Source: Macrostomum lignano
Taxonomy: Eukaryota
Direction of reading: 5' to 3'
NCBI GenBank assembly: GCA_002269645.1
Contig: NIVC01000687.1
Location: 62,001 to 126,000, forward strand
Length of the DNA: 64,000 nt
The notes under the pieces were generated by a model, which was given only the letters and a program-made list of their open reading frames with translations, did not search any database and was not told the origin of the DNA. A program made the position numbers and the translations under genes. Below are positions 14,030-60,100 of the stretch, one piece after another. The first letter of the stretch is position 1, and each line of letters starts with the position of its first letter.

Positions 14030-14333
14030 ACTAGAGGCAGGGGGCTGTGCGCAGCTTGGCGCACTTCAAGCGAAATTGTCGCACAACCGACGAGGGGCAT
14101 TACTGCTCATTCTGCCGACTCCCCTGAGTAGGCACACAAACGCGCAGATAAGTGCGCAGTCATACGCACAGGCACGCACTCAGATAGGAGTGCACAACGG
14201 CCCTAACTTGGTAATCAAGGGCGTTAATTGCCCGAGCAGAGCCAATTTTGCTCCAAATTAATTTGACTGCATTCGGAATCGAGCCTGGGCTCCTGGCACA
14301 TCAGAGCGTCGCGCTAGACCACTCTATGGCCGC
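14030..14333 (-). mobile_element. tRNA-derived SINE family 2 (unit X)
   Basis: A-box and B-box like head; homologous to 28640-28958 on the opposite strand. Confidence 0.6.
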
Positions 14334-15200: not shown

Positions 15201-15253
15201 CTGCTGGGGTTGGTGGAATCTGAATTGAATAGGGGATCAGGTTTGAGCTCTTA

Positions 15254-19429: not shown

Positions 19430-19650
19430 TTTCCCCGCTCCCATAGACAGCACACTCTCCATATTCCCCGCTCCCATAGACAGCACTCTCCATATTCCCC
19501 GCTGCCATAGAAAGCACTCTCCATATTCCCCGCTGCCATAGACAGCACTCTCCATATTCCTAGCTGCCATAGACAGCACTCTCCATATTCCTAGCTGCCA
19601 AAGACAGCACTCTCCATATTCCGAGCTGCCAAAGTCAGCACTCCAGTCCT
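19430..19650. repeat. 31-bp minisatellite, short version (about 7 units)
   Basis: Paralogous to 5745-6480. Confidence 0.9.
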
Positions 19651-27600: not shown

Positions 27601-30600
27601 TGAGAGGGGAGGGTGAGAAGAGAGGGGAGGAGACAGGGGATGGAGAGGAGAGGGGAGGGGACAGGGGAGGGTGAGAGGAGAGGGGAGGAGACAGGGGATG
27701 AAGAGGAGAGGGGAGGGGACAGGGGAGGGTGAGAGGAGAGGGGAAGAGACAGGGGAGGGTGAGAAGAGAGGGGAGGAGACAGGGGATGGAGAGGAGAGGG
27801 GAGGGGACAGGGGAGGGTGAGAGGAGAGGGGAAGAGACAGGGGATGGAGAGGAGAGGGGAGTGGACAGGGGAGGGTGAGAGGAGAGGGGAGTGGACAGGG
27901 GAGGGTGAGAGGAGAGGAGAAGGCGAGAGGGGAGGATGAGAGGAGAGGGGAGGGGACAGGGGAGGGTGAGAGGAGAGGGGAAGAGACAGGGGAGGGTGAG
28001 AGGAGAAGGCGAGAGGGGAGGGGACAGGGGAGGGTGAGAGAAAGAGAGAAATAGGAGTATCACTTTTGCGAATAATAAATCAGGAAGTGGATGCCTAAAA
28101 CAGAATCAAATGCCAGAGGACAAAGGAGAGAAGGTCAAGGGTGCATTGAGTCTTTTCAAAGCAGAGGTTGCAAGCTTCAGGCCTGCATAACAAGTACAAA
28201 AGCGACGCGATACCTTGAGTGTCTTCTCCAGCGCGTCGTACACCGCCTCGGGATCTTTCAAAGCGTTGCCCTGCAGTTCCTTGGGCAGCTCGGACACTTC
28301 GCAGATGACAGCAGCGGATGGCGCAGCGGCGGGGGCGGCGGCAGCGGCAGCCGGTGCGGCAGATTCGCCAGGCAGAGGAGGCAGCTGAGCCAGGTCAACA
28401 GGCAGGCCAGCTTGAGCAGCCTGCAGCATCGGTTCGCAGCCTCTGGCGTAGCCCAGCATTCGCTTGGCGGTGGCCATGTCGCCAGTTCGCTTAGCCTGAA
28501 ACCAATTTTGCTACTGATAGTAATACGCAACGGGTTTCACTTGCTGTAGAGTCGCTACAGATTCCAGGTGGATTCTACATACAGGCTGTAAGAAAGCAGG
28601 GCTGAATAGAGACTTGTTGTAAGCGTATGTGCCAACGGCCCAGGCTCGATTCCAAGTGCAGTCACATTAATATGAAGCTAAATTAGAATCTCGGCTTGGC
28701 TCTGCGCGTGAAAATGGATGTCCTTGAGGGCCAACCCCAAGGCTCAGTGAAGTCTACATGTCTATAACGATTAAGAAAAGTTAGGGCCGCTGTACACTCC
28801 TGTGTGACAGTGTGTGCCTGTGCGTATGACTGCGTACGCATCCGCGCGCTTGTGTGCCTGCTCAGGGGAGTCGGCCAGAATGGGCAGCAATGCCTCTCGC
28901 CGGTTGTGAGGCAACGCCACTTAAAGTGCGCCAGGGTGCGTCAAGCCCCCTGCCTCTAACTATAACTAGCCCTGAGCATGCCTGAGCACATAAAAGTACA
29001 CCAATACTGTAGACCAGGCTCTCACCTGCACAGCGGCCAGTTTATACTGCTGCTGTCGCTGCATCAGCACCCGCAGCTGGGCGCCCGCCTTGCCGCCCAT
29101 GGCTGTTGCTGCTGCGGCGGCAGCGGCGCCAGCAGACGCTCCAGACGATCCGGCAGATTTTGCGGCAGCAGCCGGAGCGGCGGCTGGCAGCGGGCCAAAG
29201 CCAGGCGGAGGCGGCAGAGAGGAGAAGTCGTAGCCTGCGGCAGTCGGACCGCCCGCTCGCACGGCTGCGACAGCCTCAGCGTACTGCGACAGAATGCGGC
29301 CCATGCGCCGGGCCTTGCCGGAGTCGCCGGCCTCCTGCGCCTTCGTCTGCAGCTGCTTGTAGGCCGCCTGGCGGGCCGCCAGCTCCCCGGCGAGGCCTCC
29401 GCCAGAGGCGCTGGGTTTCGCTGCCGCAGGTTGAGCAGCCGGTTGCTGCTGTTGCTGCTGCTGAGGCGGCTGAGCTGCTTGAGGGGCCGGTGGCTTCGGT
29501 GTCAGCGGCGGCGGAGGTCCGGGCACGTCGTCGGGATCGACAGTTTCGCCGCCTTGAACGGCCTTGACCGCCTCGTCGAACTGGCGGTGCACGCGGAGCA
29601 GCTCGAGCGCCTCCTCGGTCTGGCCAGCGGATTTTGCGGCAGCGGCGGCCGCGCGGTACTCGCGAGACCGCTGCTCAAGCAGGGCCACCATCTTCGGGCC
29701 GCCCACGCCAGTTGAAGCGGCAGGCGGCGCCGCCGGGCCCGGGTTGACATAATCCAGCACCGCCTGCTGCACTTTGGCCGCCTGAGACTGCGGCTGAGAC
29801 GGCTGCGGGGGCTTCGGAGGCTGGGGCGGCAGCGAGTCCACGTCAACAGGGCGACCGCTGCGAGCATCAGTCATGGCTGAGTTCAACGTCTGCACGTTGC
29901 GCTCCAACCGGCGTCGTTTCGACGGGTCTTCGGTGGCGGCCAGCAGGCGCTGGTAGCCGGCGAGGCGTTCGGAAATCAGAGCGGACAGGTCCGGCTTCGG
30001 CGGCGAAGGCTGCCGCGGCGGTGGCGGTGGCTGGGGCGACTTTGAAGGCGAGCGGCCGGGTGATGGCGAACTACCGCCCAGGTAGCCCTGTGGCATGAAA
30101 TATACGAAGGGTGTCCCAGAAGTACAAGCTGTGTCACTCTGGTTAATTTGTTTATATTGGCCAAGTAGTCCAAGGACTGGGGGGGGGGGGGGGGGGTCCA
30201 AGGACTGAATGTGCCCTACTGCGTATCAACATGTCTCGATGTGCCTTAAGCATTACAAAGTGCCGCCTTAAGATTGACATCTGTTTCGGATTCTGTTGAT
30301 TTATCAAGTTCTCTATCTTACTATAGCTTTTTGCGTTCAAGTTCAGAAAACTTGCGTTCAATTTAAGATCGCGCTGAGTTGAAATAACAATTTAACTGAC
30401 AGACAGATCGCAGGAAGGATCGAACAGCGATCAAAGATGAAAGGTCTCTAACATGAACAAAGGCAAAGTCTATGGTTCTCAAACTGAACGCTAAAACGGT
30501 TTCGGCCCACAGCGAGACCCCCATTTTTTACCATAGACATCTCTGCCAGCCGCCACTTGCAGCCAATGTGGCCATGCTCACTTCAAATTCTTAAATTGAG

Positions 30601-32511
30601 TGCAATTGAACTCCTAGACTTTTTTGACCCTCAATAACCATCTTTGGCCCCTCTGCCTCTCCAGTGGATGTCTGTCTACCATGATTTTTCCATGGAGGAA
30701 AGAATAGAATGGAGTGCTAATCTGAGCCAGTTATTTTTATCTCGCTCGATTTTCGCTTTTAACATCCCTTTCCCCCCGTTCCTTCCTATTGGCTGAAAGC
30801 ATATTTTGATGCGAGCTCATACTATGCTGGGACAGACCTTTCAGAGGGGAACGAAAACGAAAACGAGACGAAAAATACTGTCTATGGCAGTCACGAGCCA
30901 ATAGGAAAGAACGGGGGGAAAGGGATGTTAAAAGTTCAGATCGAACGAGATAAAAAATAACTGGCTTAGATTAGCACTCCATTCTATTCTTTCCTCCATG
31001 GATTTTTCCCACAGACTATCATAACCGTTACTTTAAAAGTAGAAAGCATGCATCTTTTTATTGATTTCAATTTAACAGTCTTGATTGACGGAAATGATAT
31101 TGATATAATTAGATAGTTGTTTAACGTAGGATATTTCTAATGAAAATCAGTTTCATTAAGAAAATTTGATGGAGTTCGGTTTCACGGAGAGGATCTCGAT
31201 GATTTTTACGGTTTCACTGAGAGGATTTTTGATGGATTTTAGTTTCATGAAGAAAATTTGATTGTAATGATTGTAGTCATTTTTGTGATAGGTCAGAGAT
31301 AAAGTTGGGGGGGGGTTGCATACGCCCATTCAAGTTATTATTTCAGTAATTTCAGTAATGGAGGAGGCGGGTAACAAATTTCAATTGGTTTTATTGTCGA
31401 GCACCTTCAGTTAGCTAGATAAGAGAGTAGAGAGGAGTAAAAACAGAAAAGAGGAGAGATGATAGAAAAGAGAGTAAAGTGATTAGAGATGACAGATGGG
31501 AGAGAAGAGGGGAGTGAGGTGGGAATGAAGAGGGAGAGAGAAGAGAAGAGGAGAGAGAATAGAGAGTAGAGGGAAGAAACGAGAGAGCAGGAGAAAGGAG
31601 ATGAGAAATAGCAGAGAGGAGACAGGACAGATGAGAGGAGGGATAAAAGAGTACAGAGGAAATAGGAGAGAGGAGAGATCGGAGAGAGGAGAGAGGAGAG
31701 AGACGAGAGATGAAAGATCAGATAGATGAGAGAGATACGAGAGTAGAGAGGAGAAAGTAATAAGGAGAAAGAATAGGATCAAGATGAGAGCGCAGAGAGG
31801 AGAGATGAGAGATGAGAGAGAAAAGAGGAGAGATCAGACAGCAGGCTGGGTCTGGAGCAAACAGGGAAATTAAGATATGGTATTTGAAAACGTTTCGTAT
31901 AGGAATTGGAGACGATTTGGAAGATGGGATTTAAGTCATGGAATTTCAGCTGATGGATTTCAGGGAATATAGTTCCGGTAATGGGAGTTCTTCCCCTAAT
32001 CCCCTTTCTCCTCCGAAGGAGGAGTTCCACTCGTGTGAAGCCGAAGCTCTATTGAAAATGTATGCAGACATGATTATTGAGCCACAGCATTGGCTGCCGA
32101 CTTGTACTTGTGTAGTTGACAGAGAGAAACTGAGGGGTGGTGATCTGTCTCTACTCAATCCAACGCACACTTGAGTTATTCCATAACCCGTACCTGAAGC
32201 TCATTAAGCAGTTCGGGATCATTCTCATCAACGTCGATGTCCTCATCGTCCGGCAGATCGTCATCGGCAGCAGCAGCCAGGGGCCGCGTCTTGGCCTTCG
32301 CGGCGGCGGCGGCAGCAGGTGCTCGGCGCTTCTCTGGCGACGGCGTGGAGCTGTTACCACCGCCGAGCAGGTCGTTCAGTTCGGCCTCGAGGTCCGCGTC
32401 CTCTTCAACTCGGCCGTAGAGGCCCTCTTCGATCTGCTGCTGAGAGTTCAGGCCCAGGCCGCCCAGCAGGTTGGCCGTCATCTCATTCTTGGTGGGCTTG
32501 CGGCCCGCCAT
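21642..32511 (-). CDS. CC2D1: Coiled-coil and C2 domain-containing protein 1 / lethal(2) giant discs-like (911 aa; exons 32511-32194, 30087-29026, 28495-28214, 27109-26819, 26271-25915, 22067-21642)
   Basis: N-terminal DADLEAELNDLLG motif. Four DM14-like repeats (e.g. LEQRSREYRAAAAAAKSAG...FDEAVKAVQGGETVDPDDVPGPP). C2 domain with GLKFDVMYRRGFLKKD and MDGRKAVGGRLEVQVRLREPL. All six exons join in phase 0 with GT-AG introns. Confidence 0.9.
22130..22470 (+). mobile_element. Full-length tRNA-derived SINE family 1 with a CORE-like central domain
   Basis: TAGCCTAGTGG A-box and GGTTCGATTCC B-box. TGTGTCCTCGAGCAAGACACTTAACTC...CTGTAAAAT resembles the MIR/CORE domain. Includes (GT)n and the shared 3' tail. 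Confidence 0.75.
23228..24609 (+). CDS. Secreted PAN/apple + FReD protein FReD-B2 (281 aa; exons 23228-23294, 23410-23631, 23954-24082, 24182-24609), nested antisense in the last CC2D1 intron
   Basis: Signal peptide MPHFLLAVGFSLCLLTVVSA; PAN and FReD motifs; GT-AG introns; total 846 nt. Confidence 0.92.
26325..26775. repeat. 26-bp minisatellite in CC2D1 intron 4 (native copy, about 17 units)
   Basis: Same unit, with 25-bp and CTACAGG variants. Confidence 0.95.
27430..28050. repeat. Purine-rich degenerate tandem repeat (GGAGAGGAGAGGGGAGG...ACAGGG) in CC2D1 intron 3
   Basis: Nearly pure G/A tract with a recurring unit of roughly 25-27 nt. Confidence 0.9.
28640..28958 (+). mobile_element. SINE family 2 copy in CC2D1 intron 2
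   Basis: Reverse-complement homology to 14030-14300. Confidence 0.65.
30691..31000. mobile_element. 310-bp MITE with about 100-bp terminal inverted repeats and an 8-bp target-site duplication (hAT- or P-like non-autonomous element)
   Basis: Ends CATGGAGGAAAGAATAGAATGGAGTGCTAATCT / AGATTAGCACTCCATTCTATTCTTTCCTCCATG. GATTTTTC flanks both sides (30683-30690 and 31001-31008). Confidence 0.92.
31140..32034 (+). mobile_element. 3' portion of the Helitron-like element family in CC2D1 intron 1
   Basis: Contains the 30-bp internal repeat, the purine tract and the terminus CTCCTCC-GAA-GGAGGAG TTCCACTCGT, as in 57101-63815. Confidence 0.75.
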
Positions 32512-32526
32512 GCTGCAGGCGGGAGG

Positions 32527-33195
32527 CGGGTAGGGGCGATTCTTGAACTGGTAGGGGCGATTCTTGATCGGATAGGGGCAATTCTTCAGCTGGTAGGGGC
32601 GATTCTTGAGCGGGTAGGGGTGATTCTTGATCGGATAGGGGCGATTCTTGATCGGATAGGGGCGATTCTTGAGCTGGTAGGGGCGATTCTTGATCGGGTA
32701 GGGGCGATTCTTGATCGGGTAGGGGCGATTCTTGAGCGGGTAGGGGCGATTCTTGATCGGGTAGGGGCGATTCTTGATCGGGTAGGGGCGATTCTTGATC
32801 GGGTAGGGGCGATTCTTGAGTTGGTAGGGAAGATTTTTGAACTGGTAAGAGCGATTCTTAAGCGGGTAGGGGCGATGATTCTCAGGGTAGGATAGTGGCG
32901 ATTTTCAGTGTAGGATAGTGGCGATTCTCAGGGTAGGATAGTGGCGATGGGTAGGATACGGGGATTATCAGCGTAGAATAGTGGCGATTCTCAGGGTAGG
33001 ATAGGGGCGATTCTCATGGTAGGATAAGGGCGATTCTCAGGGTAGGATAAGGGCGATTCACAGGGTAGAATAAGGGCGATTCTCAGGGTAGGATAAGGGC
33101 GATTCTCAGGGTAGGATAAGGGCGATTCTCAGGGTAGGATAAGGGCGATTCACAGGGTGGGATAGTGGCGATTTGCAGGGTAGGATAGGGGCAAT
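32527..33195. repeat. 21-bp then 23-bp minisatellite (GGGTAGGGGCGATTCTTGATC / GGGTAGGATAAGGGCGATTCTCA) directly upstream of the CC2D1 acceptor
   Basis: Tandem periodicity; explains the RVGAILD-repeat ORF. Confidence 0.9.
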
Positions 33196-34283
33196 TTTTA
33201 AGAGTTGGACAGCTGTACTTTTAGGACTAGTGGTAATTAAGCTATTAAAACCTTTAATAGAACTAAATAATGCTTAATTAAAGATAAAAACATATGAGTA
33301 GAACTAGGAACACAGTAGTTGAGTAGAAACTCAAACATTAATTTATTGCATACAGACAGAGCAGTAAAGTTGACACTGCAGTGTCATCAAGTTAGTTATA
33401 ATTAACAAAATAACCGCTCGTAAACAATCGGAATAAAAATATTTTAGCAATACTCGGCAGTCCCAAATAAAAGTTCTGATAAAAACTGTACAAATTATGA
33501 GAGAAGTACCATGCATTTGAGTAACCGTTAGGCCCTAGACTGGTCCTAGACTCGAGCCTGGAATCGCCTGACCCACTGTATATTCAAACTAAACAATTGT
33601 TAAAGGAGAATCACAAAGTAAATATGAAGACATATTCGAAATTGGATAATTAAAGCACAAACTACTCACACAATGGAATATTGAATAGTAAGTTATACAT
33701 TACATTGTCATAATTTGTTCAACATTTCTCTATTATCACGAAAAGTAGATAGAAATTGCTTTCCGAGGATTCGTTTAACTCAATCAAAATTTATATTACT
33801 GTTAGTAGCTGAAACGCACGTAGCTACTATTTTAGGTAAGGAATTCTGTAAGTCCAATTGTTTACTAAATTGAAACCTGTTGACAATCAGTGAGAAAAAT
33901 CACTTGCTATGCACAGAGAAGAACGCATACTGTGCATAAAAAGAGGAGAGAATATTCAATAATACACACAAGAATAGACAAAAATTAACAAAACAGCTTA
34001 ATCGGCAAACACAATATAAAACTCAAGTCGGTCAGTATTTGGGAATAAAAAATATTCAAGATCATAGCATCAATTGTGTAATATCCAGTTTACATCTACA
34101 TTAGCATACAAAATGTAACATTGTTACCTTATTTAGGAAAATCAGCGCAAACAACATTTAATCCTATAAGCCCCATCAATTTAATGCTCGCTTGAGTATT
34201 TTGACTAGTGAAAACTACTAATAGTAAGATGATGCAGAGATAGTAATTCTGCCAGGCTACAAATAATGTACTTTAATGATGAT

Positions 34284-35194
34284 TCAAATAGGCAACGACT
34301 GGCCTCCCTGTTGAGTCATTGACGAAGCCGAAGAGCATGATGACGAAGAATTCTGAGCTTGATGATGCTGATGCTGATGAAGCAGCTGATGCTGATTGGG
34401 GCTGCTGGCTGAGTGGCCAGCCATACTAATGGTGACGCTGATGCCCAGGTTGCCGGTCTCAGCGAACAGAGAGGCGATGTTGGAGTCGAACACCAGGCAG
34501 TCCGAGTTGGCGATGGCCGCCTGCACACCGTCGTGAATTGACCGCGGCGTCGCCTCCCAGGTGAGCCGGCGGCGCTGGCCGTTGAGCTCCAACCGGTAGG
34601 CGAACTGGTCCGCCTGTTTGCGATTGCCGATGAGCTGCACAATGGCGTAGAACATCACCTGGTTCTCCAGGCTGCGCTCCTGCTTCTCCAGCACCAGCAT
34701 GAAGTTGTAGCCGAAGCAGCTCTGCATCATCACCCAGTCCACTGCGCCTGGCAGGTTGATGTCTGTGGCCAGGAAGATGATGTCCTCTCCCTGCAGGGTC
34801 GTGATGCTCTTGTGCTGCTGGGTCAGGTGATTCATCACCTGGGCGAGGATTGCAGGGGAACTGATTGAGAGACAGACAGACACAATTGTCATTTGTTCTG
34901 TTTAACACAGTAATTAATATGCTGATTAGTATAATTGCATCATAACTGTGTCAACTGTGCCAAAGGACAGTTAAACAAAAATTAAAAATGTGATAATCGG
35001 AATAGTAGTAGCGTAGAGGCACAGTTGGCAGAATTGCAGACTTTGCTAGGACAATTATTTTTCAGAATAAAACAGACAGACAGACAGACATATAGACAGA
35101 CAGACAGAGAGACAGAGAGACGAGAGACAGACAGACTGATAGACAGACAGAGAGACAGACAGACTGATAGACAGACAGAGAGACAGACAGACAT

Positions 35195-35269
<75 letters not shown>

Positions 35270-35426
35270 TACAGACAGACAGACACTAAGACAGACAGAC
35301 AGACAGACAATATGTCACACGGACACTATGACAGACGGACACTATGACACACGAACACAATCACAGACAGACAGACAGACAGATAGACAGATAGACAGAC
35401 AGACAGACAGACAGACAGCCAGAAAC

Positions 35427-35480
<54 letters not shown>

Positions 35481-36119
35481 GAACAGACAGAGGCGCAGGC
35501 TCACCTGCTCCAGAGAGCCCTGCCACTTGCAGCTGGCGCCGGGACACGGGCAGGTGTACGGCCTGAACTCGCAGACGTCCTCATGCTCAGTTTTGCTGGT
35601 GTGCAGGAAGCAGTCGGAGCAGCCGTTATTCACATACTTGCAGGGGAACAGCACCTGGGCGGCCAGCTTGTCCATGATCAGATTGCGGATGTTGGCCAGC
35701 GGTCCCCGGCAGGTCGGGCAGCTGCTCAGCTTGGAGCGGCAGGCGGCGCAGACAATGTGACCGGCCTGGCACTGCAGGATGGGCGGCAGGGCGAAGTCGA
35801 AGCAGACGGGGCACTCGAACAGCGACGCCAGCTCGAGATTGTGCGCCGGGTCGGCGGCGGCGGCGGCCGCGGCAGCAACAGCGGCGGCCACAGTTGATGA
35901 GGAGCCGCCAACTGCAGAGGCAGCGGCCGCGCCTCCGCCTACGCCAACCACAGCCGCGGTGGGCGGAGCTGCTGAACCTGACATCGGCTTGCCGCTGACA
36001 AACCCGACGGGGTGGTGGCCACCGCCTCCGTCCGCTGTTGAAGCACTGGAGGAAGCGGCAGCCTGACGGGCAATCAAGGAAGCGGACTTGCTATTGGAGC
36101 TCGGGTGAATTTTGCTCAT
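34284..36119 (-). CDS. SIAH: Seven-in-absentia (SIAH) E3 ubiquitin ligase (389 aa; exons 36119-35505, 34838-34284)
   Basis: [42 protein letters not shown], zinc fingers, and the substrate-binding domain [28 protein letters not shown]...[11 protein letters not shown]. Confidence 0.97.
35070..35490. repeat. (GACA)n microsatellite in the SIAH intron
   Basis: Direct observation. Confidence 0.97.
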
Positions 36120-37210
36120 GCTGTGCAGGGCGCCACTGGAATTTGGTGGGCAGACATTGAGCTGCTTTGCAGACTGGCGGGTCTCATTTCTGTGTTGAAT
36201 ATTACACTATATATTGCAGGCGACATGGTCCCAGCGCTGACAGCAATTCTGCCCATCCAACTGACTCATGAGCAATCGTAAGCCAATACACAGACACGCA
36301 CTCTAACGCCTTAACTTTCCAAAGGGCGCTCCGCTCATCCTATCTATAGCATCCTAAGAATCGTCTACTCTAGTCTAAGAGAAGCAAAGAAAAAACGGAA
36401 AAAAGTGAAACAATATCGTGTACTTCTATAGTTTTATAAAATAATGAAGAGTCATCAACTTTCTAGGCGCAATGGTCAACATGTTTGCACGCATTAAAAA
36501 GAGTACATTTAAATTAGCAAGCTTAGTAAATTTGTTATCAGTTATGGCATCAAAAAATTAAGCCGTAAATTGTAGGCACTTGATAAAAACGACAAAAAAT
36601 AGCGATACGTACTACTTAGTGTCTGTGAGAAGTCGTAGCATTGCATGTATAAATACGAAAGCTGCTTCGTGAAACAAGAACAGAAAAAAGCCTCTATGAT
36701 CAGTAGAAAAATTTTAATTTACAAGGGGTATAAAATAGAAAATTTCGTTGTGTCAAAAAAGTATAAAGCTGTGCGAAGAATAATTTATAAGGCACTTGTA
36801 AATATTCGCAAATTTAAGATACTACTTGAAGTGCGAGTTTTAGTAGTATCTCAAAAAACTCGATGAAAGAATAAGAGTTTGGTCTTTTTTAAGAATATTG
36901 GTTTAGCACTAATCTTAATACAATACTGAGCTTTTGAGTCGGTGTACTTTACTAACAAACCTGTAAAGTATGTGCACTTTTACTATTATACTATCTGATG
37001 TGTCAGGTGACAGTTCATTATGTACTTTTAAAATCTATACATGAGCTGACAAACAACCCTGTGTACTTTAGAACGACGCGACACTATCGGAGTAATCAAT
37101 GTGTACTTTTACATGTCTATAAAGTACATGTACTTTTATGGCGTAATCCAGTCTATCAAGTATTTGTACTTTCTACAAGACTATCCGAGCTGTCAAACAA
37201 GCATTACGCA

Positions 37211-37535
37211 TCAGACGTTGGCTTCCTCGCAGGCGTCAATCCATTCGCTGTAGACATCGATAGGCTCAGTCAGGTAGTTGATGCTAGTCTGGAAGTCTTC
37301 TAGGCAGACTCGACAGGACACGCTGCCCACTCTGGCCTGCTTGTTGCTGAGGAGTTTTGGGGGTGGGGGTAAAACCATCTTGCCAGCTCAATCACTATTA
37401 ATAAAATGATAAAACTCACAGTTTCACTTCGCAAGATTTCTCGTGATTGCAGAACGGGCAGTTGAACTGCACATCCAGCGGCACAATCACTTTTGCTTTG
37501 GGCGGCGGCTTGCGCGCCTTTCTGCGCCGGCCCAT
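37211..37535 (-). CDS. ELOF1: Transcription elongation factor 1 homolog (exons 37535-37420, 37346-37211); missed by the ORF track
   Basis: Manual splice gives [83 protein letters not shown]. The 73-nt intron is GTGAGT...CAG. Confidence 0.97.
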
Positions 37536-38049
37536 CACGGCTGGAATGGAGAGCATGTACTTTGTTTATAGGAGGTCCAACTGACACCAAGGACTACTAA
37601 AGTACATCTTGATCCTGCATGTACCCTCTCTGTGCCTTGGAGGTTGGGCCTCATGGCTGTGATCCGCATGGCAATCTACATAGTGGCGCGAGAGCTCGAT
37701 GCATTTACTAAATCCGGTAAAAGTACATTTTAAGGATGACGCCTACAACAAAAATGAAATAAGGATACTCGTAAAACACTTTATAGAAATTTGACTACAA
37801 TTTATTTTTTCCATTCTTTTTCAACAACACAAGCTACTACTGTAAAAGCGGCAGTCAAGTACAATGTTGTTGGCAATCAAGCAACAGCAAATGGAAGAAG
37901 ACTTCTTAAAGACCAAAAGGGTGTTGAAGATAAAATGCACAATTTGACTTTTGTGTTTATTGGGGATGCCATAGATAAAGGAACAGAAATTCGGTTTTAA
38001 TAAGTGTAGGGATTTACAAACCATGCTTTTAATTCAGTTTTATCTAATC

Positions 38050-38240
38050 GGCTGCCTGTCTGTCTGCATGTCTGTCGGTCTGTCTGCCTGTCTGTCTGTC
38101 TGCCAGTCAGTCAGTGTCTGCCTGTCAGTCAGTCAGTCAGTCAGTCAATCAGTCAGTCAGTCAGTCAGTCAATCAGTCAGTCAGTCAGTCAGTCAATCAG
38201 TCAGTCGTCTGTCTGTCAGTCTGTCTGGTCTGCATGTCTA

Positions 38241-38311
<71 letters not shown>

Positions 38312-38354
38312 GCCTGTCTGTCTGTCTGTCTGTCTGTCTGAGTGTCTGTCTGAG

Positions 38355-38423
<69 letters not shown>

Positions 38424-38432
38424 GCCTGTCTG
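38050..38432. repeat. (GTCT)n/(CAGT)n microsatellite between WDR18 and ELOF1
   Basis: Direct observation. Confidence 0.97.
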
Positions 38433-38527
38433 TGTATAATTTTGAGCGTGTGAAAGTTTATACCCCCGTATATCCATGGCAACAACTTAACACACACAAA
38501 CTCTATAATAGAGTTTCAGTTTCCCCA

Positions 38528-41500
38528 CTAATTTTTCCCCGAAATCAACTGCAGAGCCCGACGCTTCAAATCGTCCAGCCGTTTGGCTTCGGCTGCTGCC
38601 GCCGCTGCTGCAGCTGATTTGGACTTGACCGCATCGCCCTGAGCTTCAGGCTTTTCTTCATCAACCACAGACTCGCGCATCTCAGCCTCCTCTGCTACAT
38701 CATCTTGAATCTCTTCCGGCTGCTCCCGCACTGCCTCAGCTTCGGCATCTTCGACGGGCGGCATCGGCGGGAACCTCAGCAGCAGTTCAGAGTCGCCGAA
38801 GTCACCGCGGCCAAGCCTCAGTCGGGCTGTCCTGGCAGCTGACGATCGCTGCTGCTGCTGCTGAAGCAGGCTCCGCTTCAGCTGACCGTGCAGCATCAGA
38901 GGATGCCGCCGAGCTGGAGCACCAGCTGCTGCCAAGTTGGGAGTGGCAATAAGCATGCAGGCGATGGGGCAGGCGGAGTGCTTGAGGCTGAGCAGCTGCG
39001 CGAGGCCCGGGCAGGTCACGATCAGCACGCGGCCCCGGCTCGAGCCTACGGCCAGCCGATCGGACAAAGGCGAGATCACGACGGCGACAGCGTCGCCATC
39101 TTCAGCTGGCCAGAGCCGCTGGGTGGCCAGGCGGCTTTCGGTGCTGCAGGCATCGCCTTGGAGGCCCTGCTGGTGAGGCTGCAACTGCGACTGCTGCAGC
39201 AGAGGCCTCATCATGCAGACCCGGATGGCCAGGCCAGCTGAGCAGCCGAAGTAGGCGTGGGTCAGGGTGGCGTCGCCGCCGAGGGGTGGCTGCGGCAGCA
39301 GCAGCTGCAGCAGGCGGCTGCCAGTAGAGCAGCAGAACAGGCTTACCTGATGAAGGAGGTAGGCAAATGGCTTGGGGACTCAGGATGTCGATATAACCGT
39401 TCCTCTTGAGTCTGCTCTAAGAGACTCGGGTTTATGACCCTAAGGTCTAATATATGGAATCTGGGAGGCTGGCCCAGCAAACTGGGGATCTGGGAGGCTG
39501 GCCCAGCAACTGAGGATTTGGGAGGCTGTCCCAGCAACTGAGGATCTGGGAGGCAGTGACCCAGCAACTGAGGATCTGGGAGGCAGTGACCCAGCAACTG
39601 AGGATCTGAGGCTGGTGGCCCAGCAACTGAGGATCTGGGAGGCAGTGACCCAGCAACTGACGATCTGATCTGAGGCTGGTGGCCCAGCAACTGAGGATCT
39701 GGGAGGCTGGTGGCCGAGCAACTGAGGATCTGGGAGGCTGGTGGCCCAGCAACTGAGGATCTGGGAGGCAGTGACCCAGCAACTGAGGATCTGGGAGGCA
39801 GTGACCCAGCAACTGAGGATCTGGGAGGCAGTGACCCAGCAACTGAGGATCTGGGAGGCTGGCCCAGCAACTGAGGATCTGGGAGGCTGGCCAAGCAATG
39901 GCTCCAGTCAGGGATCTAACACTTGATGATAAACACCAAACTATGATCAACAAAGACCCACCGGAGCAACACCTTAAACAGAGCCTCAAAGCCCACAGCT
40001 CGCACCTGGCCATTAGCAGCCCAGGCGGCCAGCATGCAGTTATGCGGAGCCGCACCGATCGGCCGCACGCCGACAGCCGGGCACATGGCAGCCACCCAGC
40101 TGTGCAGCGGTCGCACAGCGGAGGCGCCGCCGCTCCCGGTCGCCAGCTGCAGCTGGGCGCTGGTCAACGCCAAGCCGGAGTCCCACAGGCAGACTAAACC
40201 GTCATCCCCTGATGAGGCCAGATAGTGGGGAGGCTGCGACCAGGCCAAACAGCGAATGCGGCGATGATGGGAGCCAGACAGCACTGACAGCAGGTCACCT
40301 GTGCTGGCGTGCCACACCTGAGGGAGGGGGAGGGGGAGCGGGTGAGATGTGCTCTTGATGAGTCTTCTTTTAGTCTTGAGATTTTGAGTAGGATTTGAGA
40401 GATTTTAGGTAGGATTTGGGAGATTTCAGGTAGGATTTGGGAGATTTAGGTAGGATTTGGGAGATTTTAGGTAGGATTTAGGAGATTTCAGGTAGGATTT
40501 GGAAGATTTTAGGTAGGATTTGGGAGATTTCAGGTAGTATTTGGGAGATTTTAGGTAGGACTTGAGATTTTAGGCAGGATTTAAGAACTTTTAGGCAGGT
40601 TTTGGGAGATTTTAGGAAAAATTTGGCGAGTTTATTATCAAGTTCAAAAAAGGTAAAACGGTAGGTCGCAGACTGTCAAGTTGAGGTTTTCAAGATATTT
40701 TTATCTACTACTAAAATGGAATTATATATGACGTTTACGAATGCTGGACAACAGAATATAAATAATTTTAATGACATAATTTGTACAGGTTTTTATTCGA
40801 GGTTGCAGTCTAGCGATCAGAGCGTCGGACTCCCAACTAGAAGGTCAGTGGTTCGATTCTCTCAACCCACTCAGAACAATTTGTGTCCTCTAGCAAGACG
40901 CTTCATTGCTTCAGTTTACCCAGCTGTAAAATGGGTTCCAGCATTAGCTGGGGTTACTGAGGGTTGTGTGGAGTCCCCCAATCCCCCCCCCCAGTCCTTG
41001 GACTAAACAGCAATACGCAGCCTTCAGGTGCGCCGTGGAATGGCTTCGGCTGAGCTGTCGGTTGCCCAATTGGGGCAGGTGTAATCAATTACGAGCGTAT
41101 TATTATTATAACGTAGCACTAATTAGATGACGAAGCACCTGAGTGTCTTAACACGTTGAGGTTACTCTAACCTTTTACCCGCAGCATCTGTGACTATGTC
41201 ATACTTTTACTTCAACATTTAAGACTGCTCAACCCTCCTAGCCTTACCAGAATCCGCTCGCCCAGAGCAGCAGCACAGATTTCGCCGCAATCAGTGAACG
41301 CCAAAGATGTGGCCTGACTGGGGAGAACGATTCGCCGGTGCTGCTGCTGTTGCTGCTGCTGTTGCTGCATCTGCCAGCAGCAGATCAGTGGTTTACCAGC
41401 AGCCGCAGAGAACACGGTGCCATAGTCTGCTGCACAGCACAAACTGCCAGGCACCGGTGGCTCAGTCTGACGGCACTGATTCAGTTGGGTGCCGCTTTGT

Positions 41501-41556
41501 AAATCATAGCAGCTGGTTTGGCTGCCCCCGGCGGGTCCCGAGTCGCTTACAATGAG
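38528..41556 (-). CDS. WDR18: WD40 protein WDR18/Ipi3-like (exons 41556-41248, 40317-40006, 39346-38528); no in-frame ATG in the first exon
   Basis: LIVSDS...[10 protein letters not shown]...[14 protein letters not shown]...IL|[27 protein letters not shown]...[13 protein letters not shown] follows the WDR18 layout recalled from the human protein. Coiled-coil-like C-terminus. Phase-0 GT-AG introns. Confidence 0.8.
39460..39895. repeat. 28-31-bp minisatellite (CCCAGCAACTGAGGATCTGGGAGGC...) in WDR18 intron 2
   Basis: Tandem periodicity. Confidence 0.93.
40385..40620. repeat. 20/21-bp minisatellite (GGTAGGATTTGGGAGATTTTA)n in WDR18 intron 1
   Basis: Tandem periodicity. Confidence 0.9.
40800..41105 (+). 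mobile_element. SINE family 1 copy in WDR18 intron 1
   Basis: tRNA-like head (GGTTCGATTC), CORE-like TTGTGTCCTCTAGCAAGAC...CAGCTGTAAAATGGG, and the shared tail. Confidence 0.75.
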
Positions 41557-41580
41557 CTGCAGCAGATCAAGTTTGAATCT

Positions 41581-44500
41581 TTTTTAAGGGACTATTATGG
41601 GAACTATGGCCTTAAACATTTTAGTTAACTATACTTAGCTAATAATACTTATATGGATACTTGATTTTATTTGATTTTAAAGTGCTTTGTAAATGGTGAG
41701 TGCAGGCTGCCTTAAAAGTTTGCTTCCACTTTAAATAGTATGTCTTTATGTAAATTAAGTATTCAACTAAATGTAATACCAAATTAATTCAGATTATGCA
41801 TGAGCAAAAACCAGCCAGAATTAAGTCTTGGAATGACATTATCTGACAATGTAAGCATTTTGAAGGGGTTGCATGAGAGAACACACACTGGTGTTCATAA
41901 TAAATGGTGTTTTTTTATATGCGAAATATATGATCTTTATTAAATAAAACATAGGTTTAATAGCTACAATAACTTCATTTGTTACTATCAGTTTTTGTCA
42001 ATCAATAGTTACTTAAGACTGAGCATTACCATCCATGATTATTGATTCATAACATAGTTAGGTCTCCAACATAACAATGTATAGGCTAAGATATAATAAA
42101 TAAATAATAGCTATGTACTACATAATAGCTTTTGTGATTTCTTGAAAAATTTACTAATAAAACATTGTATTGGTTTTCACTCTAGGGATTATGTTAAGGC
42201 TATCCTTCACTGCTAACTTATTAGAGCTAGGTTTTTGTAGTATATAGGTGCTATAGCATCCTAACTTTCATTTTGATACATTGGATTTTAAATACCTTGA
42301 CACCTATTAGAATTAGCAATTAGTGGGAACAAGAATAATATTAAATTTGAAAGAAAATCCTAAAGCCAAATTGAATGATTTTTGTTTGAATGAAAATATC
42401 AAATAATTTTTTTGAAATTTAAAATTTCTTTTATCTAAAATATAGAGCTATACTCTATAAAAGAGATATAGACCAGACATGCACAACCTTGGGAATCACT
42501 TGGCTGTTTCTATTGGAAACATATACATGTAAGTTGCTATTGGCTAAGAGCAGTCACGTGACTACTACTCTGTTCAATAGTGACTTACATGTGTGTGTTG
42601 GCAATAGAAATGGCCAGGTGAATCCCTAGATTGTGCCCAAGCATGATCTAGACCTTTATTGAAATAAGTGGAAAAAGATGTTCAACCATCTTGGAAAATC
42701 TTGGATCTTAAAAATTTTTGGAATTTTCTAGTGACATGTTGCAGCTAGAGTTGAAGCAGATGGTTTTGGGTAAATGGCAAGAGTAACTATGACTGTCTTA
42801 TAAAGGCTAAATGCATCATCATCTAATTAGTACTACACCTATATTTGGTGCAAAGGTTAACAGGTTTTGCTTTGCGTTGTATTTTTGAGCTACAATTTTA
42901 GACCCCATGTCATATATCTATAGGTTTTCTACACTTATTCCAATAGGGATCTAGACCACTCAATAACTTGGGAAACCTAAAACTTAAAAGTCTACTAGAG
43001 CTATTGTTTGATAAGTTTGATAAGTTTTAGGAGGGAGCTCCTAAGGGTAGAGCAATAGATTCTTTTAGAAATAAATAAATGTTGCTAGTTTTAAAGCTTT
43101 TGTGAGGGGAGCTTTAAAGTCACATAGGTTGTTGTTGTTGTTAAACAAGGTGGGTAGCCTAGGGGCTCCCACAGATCAGCCTAGGGAAGGGCTCTGCTGC
43201 TAGATCTGTGTGGCCATACTGCTAGGGGCATATAGCCCAAGAGGCCATTATTGGGACCAGGGCCTAAAGGCCTAGACATACCTAACTGGGGCTACTAGCT
43301 CAAACCTATAGACTAAGGCACTGCCAACACAAAGTGGAATCAGGGACAGTGCTAAGACCAAGTCCACTCAAGCCACCCCCAGCAGACAAATCCTGAAAGT
43401 GCACAAAAAAGATTAGAAAAGCTTTGGAATACTACTAAAAGTGGTCTAAGAGTGAGGAAACCCCAAAGTCTATAGAAAAGGCTTAATTTTGAAGTGAGTC
43501 TAGGCAGCCTATTTACCAAGGGCAAGTATCTTATCAACCCTATTGGAATAAATGTTGAAAACACATAGATATATACATGCTTTAGAAAAAGAGTCAAATT
43601 ATTTTACAGCACTTTATGATTATTAGAGATGTTCCAAAAGAGCATTTTTGTTGAAATCAAAATTGGCAAACTTTCCAAAATTGAAATTGAAATTTTTCAA
43701 AATCAATTTCAGAAAAACAAAGTTTAGTATGACCAACATTGACTGTTTTACTTTTGATTTACTGCTAATGCAAAAAGAAATATATGTATATGTAGCAGAA
43801 ATTAGTTTATTTTTGGCCACTTTTTAGACAATTCCAAAATCTTGACTTTTGAATTGTTTTAAATCAAAATTTGCTCCTAAAAATTCCTAATTTTGGAAAT
43901 TTCAAATTCAAATTTTGGAACATCTCTAAGCATTATAAATTACAAGTGTATAGGCTCCTTCTACAAAGGTATTAGACCTCCCATGTATATTTATTTGCTA
44001 GAGCAACAGCCAGCAAGAAAGGGCAGCATACATGTAGGTGCTTTATGCCTATGCTCGCGCTACACTTTAGAAAATTTTCAAAAGTGCACTGGACACTATC
44101 TACAGTTTTACAACTTTTTATAGGGCTTATCAAGAGGTAAAGATGCTATAGAAACCTTCCTATAAGGCTGCAAGCCTCAAGGCTTTTTCACTATACAGCT
44201 CTAAACAATTTTGGATATAAGGGCCAAGCCAATGGGTTAGGGAAGGGCACAAAGGGCAAGAGGAACCCAGACTCAGCCTAGGATTAGTTAGTTAGGGACT
44301 CAAGCAATAAGATTTTTGATGTCACATGTTGTTGTTAGGATAATAGGGGCTTCAATTATAGTAAGATTAATATTTTCACTTTCAATGCAAAGGGAGCTCT
44401 TAAGTCCATAGGATTGGGGCTTTAACAAAAGAGATTCTAATGCTATATAACCATTGTAGTTAAGATGAGATCATGAGAATTGCCTTAAAAAATTTCTTAT

Positions 44501-57100: not shown

Positions 57101-60100
57101 TCTATATATACTAAAGTTGACGCGTTGTTTGTCTGTCTGTATGTCAGTTCGATAACTCCTCCTAGAATACTTGCAACTCAGCGTTGAAACTTATATGGGA
57201 AAACTGCAAATTTTCCGAGGATGGCTTTAGGCTATTTTAATCTTTCATTTTCAATTTTTAAGATCCCTAAAAAAGCAGAAAACGGCGGTCTTGACCTTTG
57301 ATAATCTTAATTGTCCCCTCTTTCTGCTCGGAGCTGAAAATTGGCATAAATTTTGAGTGATTACGCCACAACTTTTTCCTATGTCGCCAGTGCATTTTCT
57401 CTCCTGTGGGGGAATGGGCGCGTTCTCATTGGCGGCGTGTGTACAATTGGACCCTGGCTCACTGGCTGACTTTATAGATAATTGCGCAATGATATGGCTA
57501 CTGATAAGTTTTCCTGCCTATCAATGGGCAGTCCTGTGTATTTGTTGGACATTGAAATTCAATGCATCAACTTGCAAGCAGGCAGTGAACGTACACTCGA
57601 TACTTCAATGCTATAAATCAGACAGTTTCAAACGCTAACTGTTCCTCGAGTTTTAAACTTTGAGAGGAGAAACTTATATTGCTGGCAAGATCTTGCAACG
57701 CTGAGTTCGGGGATATAAGTTGTTTGCTTTAACTATGAAAAGAAAAAGCACAGCATTTGGAAAACTATTTCCATACTTTTAACTTTTTGCAAATATTGTA
57801 CTCAGTTTTGCAAGACGTAATAGATAAAGTTGGGGGGAGGGTTCAACTTCTCACTACAGCTGTGGATTGGAGGGTTGATTTAGATTGCGCAATCTTTTGT
57901 TAACTTTACCTGAGGCTGATACTGACTGACTGTGAAATCGGTTGCGCAATGAATTGATTCAATTAGTTCAATATTTTTATCTGTGCCTTTTAACACGAAG
58001 CTGTGCGTAGTTCTAACCCTAACCCTAACCCTAACCCTAATGAATCTGGCGAGTTGAGTTGTTTGACGGAAAAAATTCGATTAAGTCAAGTTTAGCGGAG
58101 ACGATTTCAATGTTTAAATTCTGACGGAGAAGATTTCTGTTTCGTGGAGAGGATTTCGATGATGTTCAGTTTCACGAAAGGATTTCCATGGTGTTCAGTT
58201 TCACGGAGAGGATTTCGATCATGTTCAGCTTCACGGAGAGGCTTTCTGTTTCGCTGAGATAATTTATGATTGATTTCTGTTTTATGGAAACAATTTTGAT
58301 GGATTCAGGTTTCAAGGAGAGGATTTCGAAGGAGTCCAGTTTCACTGAGAGGATTTCGATGGTTTTTAGTTGCACAGACAGGATTTTTGCTTCGCGGAGA
58401 GGATTTTGATGGATTTGGCATCTTCAATCAGTCAGAGAAGAGAGTAAAGAGAAGACTGAAAAGAGAAGAGAGAAGAGATGATAGAAAACAGAGTAAAATT
58501 GAGTGGAGAGATTAGACATGACAGATTGGAGATGATAGGAGAGAGAATAGATGAGGGATAAGAGCGTACAGAGGCAATAGAAGAGAGGGGAGAGTAGAGG
58601 AGAAAGAAAGAGTGAGATGAGGAGATGAGGAGATGAGGGATGAGAGAGGAGGGGAGAGAGGAGACAGGAGAGAGTACAGACGAAAGACTAGGGAGAAGAT
58701 ATAAATAAGGTAGTAAAGATGAGAGGAGAGAGAGGAGAGAGAAGCGAAAGGAGAAGAGAGTGAGGAGAGAGGAGAGAGATGAAAGGAGCAAGGAAAGGAG
58801 AAAAGAGAGAATGGAGAGAATAGAAAAGAGAGAAGAGAAGAGACAGGGGATAGTGAAAAGGAGGAAGAAAGATGGGAGACAAGAAAGTAGTGTCAGAGCG
58901 TATATGAAATATGAGAAATGAGAGCAGAGAGAAGAGAAAAGAGAAGAGAGAGAGAGGGTTAAGAGAGACGATAGATAAGTGAGTAGAGATGACATATGAG
59001 AGAGGAGAGAAGAGGGAGAGATAAGAGTGAAGAGAGGAGACAGAAGACAGGAGAAGGTACAGACGAAAGACGAGGGAGAAGAGATAAATAAGGGAACAGG
59101 GGTAGAGATGAGATGAAAGAGAGGAGAGAGGAGATATGAGAGACTTGAGAGTCTTTGAGCTATGGTCTTTGAAAGATTTTGTAAAGAATTTGGAGACGAT
59201 TTGGAAGATAGGGTTAAAGACATGGAATTTCAGTTGATGGATATTTCAGGGAATAGAATTCCGGTGATGGGAGTTCTTCCCCTTTCTCCTCCGAAGGAGG
59301 AGTTCCACTCGTATATACTAAAGTTGACGCGTTGTTTGTCTGTCTGTATGTCAGTTCGATAACTCCTCCTAGAATACTTGCAACTCAGCGTTGAAACTTA
59401 TATGGGAAAACTGCAAATTTTCCGAGGATGGCTTTAGGCTATTTTAATCTTTCATTTTCAATTTTTAAGATCCCTAAAAAAGCAGAAAACGGCGGTCTTG
59501 ACCTTTGATAATCTTAATTGTCCCCTCTTTCTGCTCGGAGCTGAAAATTGGCATAAATTTTGAGTGATTACGCCACAACTTTTTCCTATGTCGCCAGTGC
59601 ATTTTCTCTCCTGTGGGGGAATGGGCGCGTTCTCATTGGCGGCGTGTGTACAATTGGACCCTGGCTCACTGGCTGACTTTATAGATAATTGCGCAATGAT
59701 ATGGCTACTGATAAGTTTTCCTGCCTATCAATGGCAGTCCTGTGTATTTGTTGGACATTGAAATTCAATGCATCAACTTGCAAGCAGGCAGTGAACGTAC
59801 ACTCGATACTTCAATGCTATAAATCAGACAGTTTCAAACGCTAACTGTTCCTCGAGTTTTAAACTTTGAGAGGAGAAACTTATATTGCTGGCAAGATCTT
59901 GCAACGCTGAGTTCGGGGATATAAGTTGTTTGCTTTAACTATGAAAAGAAAAAGCACAGCATTTGGAAAACTATTTCCATACTTTTAACTTTTTGCAAAT
60001 ATTGTACTCAGTTTTGCAAGACGTAATAGATAAAGTTGGGGGGAGGGTTCAACTTCTCACTACAGCTGTGGATTGGAGGGTTGATTTAGATTGCGCAATC

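What the first reader, a model, noticed from the sequence alone, without database searches (positions are those of the whole stretch)
41540..41600. WDR18 lacks its own start codon and may use the spliced-leader AUG
Reading upstream from the WDR18-homologous N-terminus gives ...TAA AAA AGA TTC AAA CTT GAT CTG CTG CAG CTC ATT GTA AGC GAC, an in-frame stop with no ATG in between. A CAG acceptor sits in phase 0 just before LIVSDS, which matches where the homologues begin. Flatworm spliced leaders end in AUG, and this AUG can initiate translation. SL addition here would give M-LIVSDS..., making an rRNA-processing gene dependent on trans-splicing for translation.
Basis: partly seen in the sequence, partly recalled or inferred. 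Interest (0 to 1): 0.75.

Follow-up and report, generated by a model that had tools for sequence, protein, structure and literature searches.

The report
Spliced-leader start codon for flatworm WDR18
This Macrostomum lignano copy of the ribosome-assembly gene WDR18 has no start codon of its own and most likely borrows the AUG at the end of the trans-spliced leader, a mechanism already known in flatworms; the apparent ATG in sister copies looks like an artefact of polishing the genome assembly with RNA reads.

Summary
On the minus strand an in-frame TAA (41586-41584) is followed by 71 codons with no ATG. WDR18 homology to the human protein begins about 45 codons before the first ATG (M63, 41370-41368).

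The window is M. lignano Mlig_3_7 contig NIVC01000687.1. The species' spliced leader (SL) ends in ATG, and a CAG acceptor lies in phase 0.

Two sister copies read GATTGCATGCAG where the window reads GATCTGCTGCAG, which gives them an apparent in-frame ATG. I read that ATG as a polishing scar:
- TGCATG is the 3' end of the SL.
- The assembly was polished with RNA-seq.
- The SL acceptors of the neighbouring ELOF1 and SIAH genes show the same CAG-to-ATG or CAG-to-CTG changes in some copies.
- Three of 18 multi-base differences fall on such sites (p about 2.5e-6).
- All eight variable columns carry the SL base.

The scars are accidental RNA evidence that the SL joins here.

The mechanism is supported only indirectly; no reads or peptides were available. 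SL-AUG initiation was shown in Schistosoma in 2006, so this is a new member of a known kind. Interest is modest. The assembly scars are a useful caution.

The parts
41584..41586 (-). In-frame TAA stop upstream of the WDR18 reading frame.
   Evidence: Sequence. Identical in all three genome copies.
41557..41565 (-). 3' end of the outron: CTG CTG CAG, with the SL trans-splice acceptor(s). The inferred upstream acceptor ends at 41560 and reads CTG in the assembly.
   Evidence: CTGCAG fits the [T/C]TNCAG trans-acceptor motif. The sister copies read TGC ATG CAG here, where TGCATG is the 3' end of the SL.
41561..41561 (-). Suspect base. It is T on the minus strand and was probably A in the real genome (CAG), overwritten with the SL base during RNA-seq polishing.
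   Evidence: Inference by analogy with ELOF1 copy L002, where CAG became CTG at the same offset, and from the Pilon plus RNA-seq polishing. No copy retains the A.
41248..41556 (-). WDR18 exon 1 (LIVSDS...GERIL, 103 codons), ending at the donor CTG|gtaagg.
   Evidence: Colinear with human WDR18 residues 22-118. 7 synonymous and 1 non-synonymous difference from copy L001.
41368..41370 (-). First in-frame genomic ATG (M63). It lies inside the conserved first propeller blade.
   Evidence: Translation. The alignment [13 protein letters not shown] / GKNYISAWELQRK with human WDR18 is.
40006..40317 (-). WDR18 exon 2 (VWHASTG...AANGQ).
   Evidence: The junction AANGQ|VSLFCC is as in GenBank PAA60855.1.
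38528..39346 (-). WDR18 exon 3 (VSLFCC...ISGKN) with the TAG stop.
37541..37543 (-). SL acceptor CAG of the next gene, ELOF1. The ELOF1 ATG is at 37535-37533. The acceptor is intact here, reads ATG in copy L001 and CTG in copy L002.
36136..36138 (-). SL acceptor CAG of SIAH. The SIAH ATG is at 36119-36117. The acceptor is intact here and in L001, and reads ATG in L002.
   Evidence: The GenBank 5'-partial CDS starts 1 nt after this AG in two copies.
32513..32515 (-). SL acceptor CAG of the CC2D1-like gene. Its ATG is at 32511-32509. The acceptor is unchanged in all three copies.

Best explanation
The window is Macrostomum lignano assembly Mlig_3_7, contig NIVC01000687.1. WDR18 on the minus strand is the first of four same-strand genes: WDR18, ELOF1, SIAH and a CC2D1-like gene.

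Its pre-mRNA most likely starts somewhere in the AT-rich upstream region. That outron is removed, and the 35-44 nt spliced leader, which ends ...UUGCAUG, is trans-spliced onto the acceptor at 41565-41557. The genome has no in-frame ATG between the TAA and the conserved N-terminal propeller blade. The leader's terminal AUG therefore serves as the initiator.

Both are in frame.

The in-frame genomic ATG in the two sister copies, and probably the CTG in this copy, are SL bases written into the assembly when it was polished with RNA-seq reads.

Shown: the sequence facts, the SL sequence, the polishing method, and the pattern of differences among copies. Inferred: that those differences are polishing scars, the exact junction, and that ribosomes start at the SL AUG.
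For: 1. Organism and copies: a 95%-identical M. lignano protein. The window is identical to NIVC01000687.1.
2. The SL is CGGTCTCTTACTGCGAAGACTCAATTTATTGCATG. A 44-nt form also ends in ATG. All reported flatworm SLs end in ATG, which can serve as a start codon.
3. There is no in-frame ATG for 71 codons, yet homology to human WDR18 begins at residue 16. Exon 1 has 7 synonymous and 1 non-synonymous difference; whole-gene dN/dS is 0.20.
4. The 190 nt upstream of the junction are identical in three copies except for four adjacent columns: window CTGC, sisters TGCA. The sisters' version completes ATTGCATG, the last 8 nt of the SL, directly abutting CAGCTCATT.
5. The assembly was polished with Pilon using RNA-seq mapped by STAR. 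The same group mapped these data end-to-end, which forces short SL overhangs to align as mismatches.
6. The same signature is present at the SL acceptors of ELOF1 (CAG / ATG / CTG) and SIAH (CAG / CAG / ATG). Three of 18 clean multi-base differences in 17,296 aligned columns fall in the 24 columns just 5' of four junctions (Poisson p 2.5e-6). All 8 variable columns carry the SL base at that offset.
7. The GenBank models of the sister copies are flagged partial and begin at LIVSDS. No gene is called in the 10 kb upstream.
8. There is no credible upstream ATG exon: 2 candidates in 10 kb, both more than 5 kb away, against 3.4 +/- 1.9 in shuffles.
9. [quoted passage not shown]
Against: - No SL-containing read, cDNA or peptide for this gene could be inspected. 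A search with the SL-peptide plus N-terminus found nothing.
- The upstream AG required by the M-Q-LIVSDS junction is not present in any of the three assembled copies; all read TG. It is inferred.
- GenBank CDS starts sit at CTC, not CAG. This is weak evidence, because annotated 5' ends of ELOF1 and CC2D1 are displaced 11-29 nt from their junctions.
- The acceptor lacks the pyrimidine tract seen at the gene's cis acceptors and at the neighbours' SL acceptors.
- GenBank annotates the window's own copy from an internal Met (PAA78470.1, 299 aa), so its transcript model differs from those of the sister copies for unknown reasons.
- The SL AUG has U at -3, a poor context by vertebrate rules.
Confidence: 0.75

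Rival explanations
1. Same mechanism, but the reader's junction is the only or main one. The SL joins at CAG|CTC (41557/41556) and the protein starts M-LIVSDS. The window sequence CTGCTGCAG is correct as assembled.
For: A real AG is present there in all three copies, and CTGCAG fits [T/C]TNCAG. The GenBank 5'-partial CDSs of both sister copies start at CTC.
Against: SL overhangs of reads with this junction would overwrite the CAG itself to ATG or CTG, as at ELOF1 and SIAH. No copy shows that. The SL bases in the sister copies instead abut CAGCTC. To my knowledge, STAR extends read ends without gaps, so a 3-nt shifted imprint is not expected. GenBank 5' ends in this cluster are imprecise.
Confidence: 0.2
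2. The ATG in the sister copies is real DNA. WDR18 normally starts at its own ATG (M-Q-LIVSDS). This copy has lost that ATG through a complex mutation. It is then either a decaying duplicate or is translated weakly from the in-frame CUG codons at 41565-41560.
For: Two of three copies carry the ATG. M. lignano DV1 has redundant gene copies. The first CTG has a purine at -3.
Against: It would require a 4-nt change, in an otherwise invariant 190 nt, that by chance spells the SL 3' end. Meanwhile the two neighbouring genes show the same SL-ward changes at their acceptors. The coding sequence of this copy is intact and dN/dS is 0.20. The sister-copy models were still annotated as partial even though that ATG is adjacent.
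Confidence: 0.07
3. An unannotated upstream cis exon supplies the ATG and is spliced to the CAG acceptor.
For: The acceptor could serve cis splicing. Flatworm acceptors are often shared between cis and trans splicing.
Against: No upstream exon or gene appears in the RNA-seq-guided annotation of any copy within 10 kb. Only two phase-0 ATG...GT[AG]AG candidates exist, both more than 5 kb away, which is no more than chance. The upstream region is AT-rich and contains transposon fragments.
Confidence: 0.04
4. Translation starts at the first genomic ATG (M63), and the upstream open frame is 5' UTR.
For: It is the only in-frame genomic ATG.
Against: Residues 16-62 align with human WDR18 residues 22-70, and M63 lies inside a conserved strand. 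Starting there would delete most of the first blade. In exon 1 overall, 7 of 8 differences between copies are synonymous.
Confidence: 0.03

Closest known systems
SL-AUG-initiated mRNAs of Schistosoma mansoni (Cheng, Cohen, Ndegwa and Davis 2006, J Biol Chem 281:733; summarised in PMC9851317 and PMC12582326)
   Same: The flatworm SL ends in AUG. The acceptor is in frame with a conserved ORF that has no AUG of its own, so the SL AUG is the inferred initiator.
   Different: The species is a free-living macrostomid and the gene (WDR18) differs. No cDNA or translation assay exists for this case. The evidence here is genomic plus assembly scars.
slORFs: open reading frames created by spliced-leader addition (slORFfinder, PMC9851317)
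   Same: A start codon is donated by the leader.
   Different: That study called slORFs from ribosome footprints in nematodes, Oikopleura and trypanosomes, and many were alternative frames. Here the SL AUG would head the canonical conserved protein.
NAGNAG tandem splice acceptors
   Same: Two candidate acceptors lie 3 nt apart, so use of either keeps the frame and adds or drops one residue (Q).
   Different: The upstream AG is inferred, not present in the assembled sequence. The context is trans-splicing rather than cis-splicing.
Relict spliced leaders in dinoflagellate genes, left by recycling of trans-spliced cDNAs (Slamovits and Keeling 2008; cited from my own knowledge)
   Same: SL-derived bases lie in genomic sequence directly 5' of the exon.
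   Different: Here the tracts are only 1-5 nt, graded by distance from the junction, and differ among near-identical copies. They occur in an assembly polished with RNA-seq. An artefact explains them better than retro-recycling does.

Membership tests
SL-AUG-initiated flatworm mRNA (Cheng et al. 2006 class) | The organism's spliced leader ends in AUG. | tested here: met
   The M. lignano SL ...AATTTATTGCATG is given in PMC8629364 and PMC5173321. The organism was identified.
SL-AUG-initiated flatworm mRNA (Cheng et al. 2006 class) | The mRNA is SL trans-spliced at its 5' end. | tested here: inconclusive
   The evidence is indirect. SL bases are imprinted next to the junction in two copies. The GenBank models are 5'-partial and start after the AG. 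The acceptor fits the published motif. No reads could be inspected.
SL-AUG-initiated flatworm mRNA (Cheng et al. 2006 class) | The SL AUG is in frame with the conserved ORF, with no stop in between. | tested here: met
   Both candidate junctions, AUG|CAG CUC and AUG|CUC AUU, are in phase 0.
SL-AUG-initiated flatworm mRNA (Cheng et al. 2006 class) | No genome-encoded in-frame AUG lies upstream of the conserved N-terminus. | tested here: met
   In the window, TAA is followed by 71 ATG-free codons, and homology starts at residue 16. The sister-copy ATG is interpreted as a polishing scar. That interpretation is an inference.
SL-AUG-initiated flatworm mRNA (Cheng et al. 2006 class) | Translation actually initiates at the SL AUG. 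| not testable with these tools
   This needs N-terminal proteomics, ribosome profiling or a reporter assay.
WDR18 / Ipi3 (Rix1-complex or rixosome WD40 subunit) | WD40 propeller colinear with and specifically most similar to WDR18. | tested here: met
   Human WDR18 chains (7uwf, 8fl2, 9dum) align over query 17-251 to residues 23-243, E 2e-11. They are the top hit once the generic repeat is masked, E 1e-7. Pfam finds only generic propeller families, all but the generic PF00400 WD40 repeat below their curated cut-offs.
NAGNAG tandem acceptor | Two AG dinucleotides 3 nt apart at the exon start. | tested here: not met
   The assembled sequence is CTG CAG in the window and ATG CAG in the sisters, so only the downstream AG exists. 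The upstream AG is hypothesised to have been overwritten.
SL-resolved operon (Ustyantsev and Berezikov 2021 criteria) | Same-strand neighbours with SL acceptors and repeat-adjusted spacing under 1 kb. | tested here: inconclusive
   Four same-strand genes each have a CAG acceptor just 5' of the start. Raw gaps are about 1.0, 1.1 and 1.8 kb and contain microsatellites. Repeat-adjusted distances were not computed.

The most novel reading that the evidence does not exclude
The SL-derived bases next to the acceptors of WDR18, ELOF1 and SIAH are real germline DNA. They would have been written into some gene copies by recombination with reverse-transcribed, SL-bearing mRNAs. That is SL recycling as in dinoflagellates, here caught polymorphic among recent duplicates. 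It would convert an SL-dependent start into a genome-encoded ATG. One published remark points the same way: a sequence once reported as the M. lignano SL RNA maps to the 5' end of a protein-coding gene.
Probability: 0.04. Interest if true: 0.8.

Novelty: new member of a known kind. Interest (0 to 1): 0.35.

Why it matters
- An essential pre-60S maturation factor would be translatable only after trans-splicing. That ties its expression to SL supply. It also explains why the public gene models are "partial" or truncated: PAA60855.1 and PAA83585.1 start at LIVSDS, and PAA78470.1 starts at an internal Met.
- Such models can be completed by adding the SL AUG.
- The Mlig_3_7 reference appears to carry SL-derived bases at trans-splice acceptors, probably from RNA-seq polishing. 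These scars create false ATGs and destroy real AG acceptors in some copies. They could mislead start-codon calls, splice-site motif studies, comparison of gene copies and promoter or transgene design in this model flatworm.
- The same scars can be read as a record of where the SL is joined.

Tried and rejected
- Relic-SL idea. The 22 nt upstream in the sister copies align to the SL 3' end with 18/20 matches plus a 2-nt gap. However, the same alignment score is reached at about five unrelated places in the window. Only the terminal TGCATG is meaningful, so I dropped the idea that a long relic SL is present.
- Direct transcript evidence. A protein search with the SL-encoded peptide fused to the N-terminus found no candidate. 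The 90% cluster holds only five members, none from read assemblies.
- Ortholog N-termini. The all-representatives HMMER search was swamped by generic multi-WD40 proteins. A PDB search with the N-terminal 65 residues alone found nothing. Masking the generic repeat worked.
- No tRNA, Rfam family or SL RNA gene is present in the window. TTGCATG is not enriched: 12 observed against 15 expected. Other SL-suffix matches in the window showed no convincing gene starts.
- Upstream cis-exon scan: nothing above chance.
- Literature search for the gene identifiers found no paper.
- Cis-splice junctions were checked for similar overwriting. The only difference is gtaagg against gtgagg at the exon 1 donor, which is compatible with a scar but equally with a natural variant.
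- GenBank CDS starts were considered as nucleotide-exact SL sites. I rejected this because the starts of ELOF1 and CC2D1 differ among copies and lie 11-29 nt inside the genes.
Full report
**What is at the coordinates**

The feature reads on the minus strand. The frame stays open to a donor, CTG|gtaagg, at 41248. The first in-frame ATG is codon 63 counted from CTC (41370-41368).

**Organism and gene model**

- A search with the conceptual protein returned a 95%-identical Macrostomum lignano protein.
- Its cluster holds GenBank models from assembly GCA_002269645.1, Mlig_3_7.
- The window is identical to contig NIVC01000687.1 in reverse orientation.
- Exons are 41556-41248, 40317-40006 and 39346-38528. 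They encode 479 residues and match GenBank PAA60855.1 except for allelic differences.
- Human WDR18 from rixosome and pre-60S structures aligns over residues 17-251 at E 2e-11. It is the top PDB hit once the generic WD40 repeat is masked.
- That alignment starts at residue 16 (CYDLQSG against human VWELHSG at residue 22) and covers the stretch before M63. Translation must therefore begin upstream of the only genomic ATG. The N-terminus lies within 4-5 residues of the human one.
- Against sister copy L001 there are 22.5 synonymous and 13.5 non-synonymous differences (dN/dS 0.20, p 6.6e-6). Exon 1 alone has 7 synonymous and 1 non-synonymous. The copy is intact and has been under purifying selection.

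**The spliced leader**

The M. lignano SL is CGGTCTCTTACTGCGAAGACTCAATTTATTGCATG (PMC8629364). A 44-nt consensus also ends in ATG (PMC5173321). About 30% of genes are trans-spliced, and the acceptor motif is [T/C]TNCAG. The window's CTGCAG fits it. All reported flatworm SLs end in ATG, which can act as a start codon (PMC12582326). In S. mansoni the SL AUG is in frame in 28% of trans-spliced transcripts, and more than 40 cDNAs need it (Cheng et al. 2006, as summarised in PMC9851317). A Macrostomum genome paper already calls the terminal ATG a translation start codon (PMC10468722).

**The sister copies**

Two other copies, L001 (NIVC01002101.1) and L002 (NIVC01000414.1), are annotated as 5'-partial CDSs that begin at CTC (LIVSDS). 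No gene is called in the 10 kb upstream.

Unexpectedly, both read cttgATTGCATGcagCTCATT where the window reads cttgATCTGCTGcagCTCATT. This gives them an in-frame ATG (M-Q-LIVSDS). Taken at face value, it would mean the gene has its own start codon and this copy lost it.

**Why I think that ATG is not genomic**

- The 190 nt upstream of the junction are identical in all three copies except for these four adjacent columns.
- The sisters' version completes ATTGCATG, the last eight bases of the SL.
- Mlig_3_7 was polished with Pilon using Illumina DNA and RNA-seq mapped by STAR (PMC5730564). The same paper mapped these RNA-seq data end-to-end. In that mode, reads that begin a few bases inside the SL are forced onto the outron as mismatches.
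- The neighbouring genes show the same thing. The ELOF1 acceptor is ttcCAG|CCGTGATGG in the window, ttcATG| in L001 and ttcCTG| in L002. The SIAH acceptor is ttcCAG|TGGCGCC in two copies and ttcATG| in L002.
- In 17,296 three-way aligned columns there are 18 clean multi-base differences. Three fall in the 24 columns just 5' of the four SL junctions (Poisson p 2.5e-6).
- All eight variable columns there carry the SL base at the same offset in the variant copy.
- The changes are graded: offset -2 only, then -2 and -3, then -2 to -6. Read pile-ups that thin out with distance from the junction would produce exactly this.

I therefore read them as polishing scars, that is, an accidental imprint of SL-bearing mRNAs on the reference.

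**Consequence for the junction**

At ELOF1 and SIAH the imprinted bases directly abut the first exon base. By the same logic the WDR18 imprint TGCATG abuts CAGCTCATT. The main junction is then ...UUGCAUG|CAG CUC AUU, giving M-Q-LIVSDS. The true DNA would be GAT CTG CAG|CAG|CTC, a tandem acceptor. The window's own T at 41561 would be a one-base scar like CAG to CTG in ELOF1 copy L002.

Weaknesses of this reading:
- No copy keeps that AG.
- GenBank starts the CDS at CTC. That start is not decisive, because annotated 5' ends of ELOF1 and of one CC2D1 copy lie 11-29 nt inside the genes and differ among copies.

Either way the SL AUG is in frame and no genomic ATG exists.

**Alternatives**

- An upstream cis exon has no support. 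Only two phase-0 ATG...GT[AG]AG candidates occur in 10 kb, both more than 5 kb away, against 3.4 +/- 1.9 in shuffles. The upstream 11 kb is AT-rich with transposon fragments.
- A start at M63 would delete conserved sequence.
- CUG initiation on unspliced RNA cannot be excluded, but it is unnecessary.
- A real ATG in the sister copies would need a 4-nt change that spells the SL by chance, while the two neighbouring genes show the same pattern.

**What could not be done**

No SL-bearing read or cDNA was reachable. The N-terminal protein search was empty. The large HMMER search was swamped by generic WD40 proteins. Trans-splicing at this site, and initiation at the SL AUG, therefore remain inferences.

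**Comparison and verdict**

The case works like the SL-AUG-initiated mRNAs of Schistosoma. It meets every defining feature that sequence can test. Trans-splicing is supported only indirectly, and initiation is untested. It is a new member of a known kind in a species where the SL ATG is already recognised as a potential start.

The more useful by-product is the evidence that the reference assembly carries SL-derived scars at trans-splice acceptors. The exotic alternative is that these bases are real products of cDNA recycling. It is not excluded, but I give it about 4%.

Noticed in passing
window 37541-37543 and 36136-36138 (minus strand); L001:14826-14828, L002:14494-14496, L002:15900-15902: The SL acceptors of ELOF1 and SIAH read CAG in some genome copies and ATG or CTG in others. 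The changed bases always equal the SL base at that offset. These are probably RNA-seq polishing scars in Mlig_3_7. In the reference they destroy the AG and create false ATGs.
   Followed up: yes
window 28100-41556, minus strand: Four same-strand genes sit about 1.0, 1.1 and 1.8 kb apart: WDR18, ELOF1 (Zn_ribbon_Elf1), SIAH (Sina) and a CC2D1-like gene (DM14/C2). Each has a CAG acceptor just 5' of its start. The arrangement looks like an SL-resolved operon with WDR18 first.
   Followed up: partly
window 37533-37543, minus strand: At ELOF1 the SL AUG would be out of frame and would read AUG CCG UGA. That is a two-codon upstream ORF whose stop overlaps the real start (UGAUG). It is a neat way to neutralise the SL AUG.
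   Followed up: no
window 38528-40086 (GenBank PAA78470.1, Mlig023217g2): The public model of this copy starts at an internal Met (MCPAVG, 299 aa). It omits exon 1 and the first 77 of exon 2's 104 codons. UniRef models A0A1I8GID4 and A0A1I8GTS4 start at the first residue of exon 2 (VWHASTG). SL addition at the exon 2 acceptor would also be in frame.
   Followed up: partly
L001-L003 annotated CDS starts: The 5'-partial CDS starts of ELOF1 (three copies) and of CC2D1 (the window copy) lie 9-24 nt downstream of a perfectly good genomic ATG and differ among copies. Annotated 5' ends in this assembly are not nucleotide-exact.
   Followed up: partly
window 39459-39898, 40378-40616, 38052-38433: Three repeat arrays were found. 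One has a 30-nt unit in 14.8 copies in WDR18 intron 2. One has a 21-nt unit in 11.5 copies in intron 1. A (CTGT)n microsatellite of 95 copies lies between WDR18 and ELOF1. Intron lengths differ among the three copies.
   Followed up: partly
window 40800-40900, plus strand (inside WDR18 intron 1): A stretch resembles a tRNA-derived SINE (...ggtcagtggttcgattctc...). ARAGORN calls no tRNA in the window.
   Followed up: no
window 1-3226 vs 14081-17355; 3743-5951 vs 17466-19643; 11706-14113 vs 22844-25281; 57105-60422 vs 59312-62615: Large internal segmental duplications at 83-97% identity. The first 25 kb is roughly a two-fold repeat. Gene content was not examined.
   Followed up: no
window 3336-3355 and 17533-17552, minus strand: The sequence ggattgATTGCATG|CTGAGTGC occurs in both copies of the internal duplication. 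It matches 11 of the last 12 SL bases and is followed by a short ATG-headed ORF. It could be another SL imprint or chance; about two 8-mer matches are expected in the window.
   Followed up: no
window 41246-41248 vs L001:10310-10312: The exon 1 donor is gtaagg in the window and gtgagg in both sister copies. The G equals the third base of exon 2 (GTGTGG). This could be a junction-overhang scar or a natural variant.
   Followed up: partly
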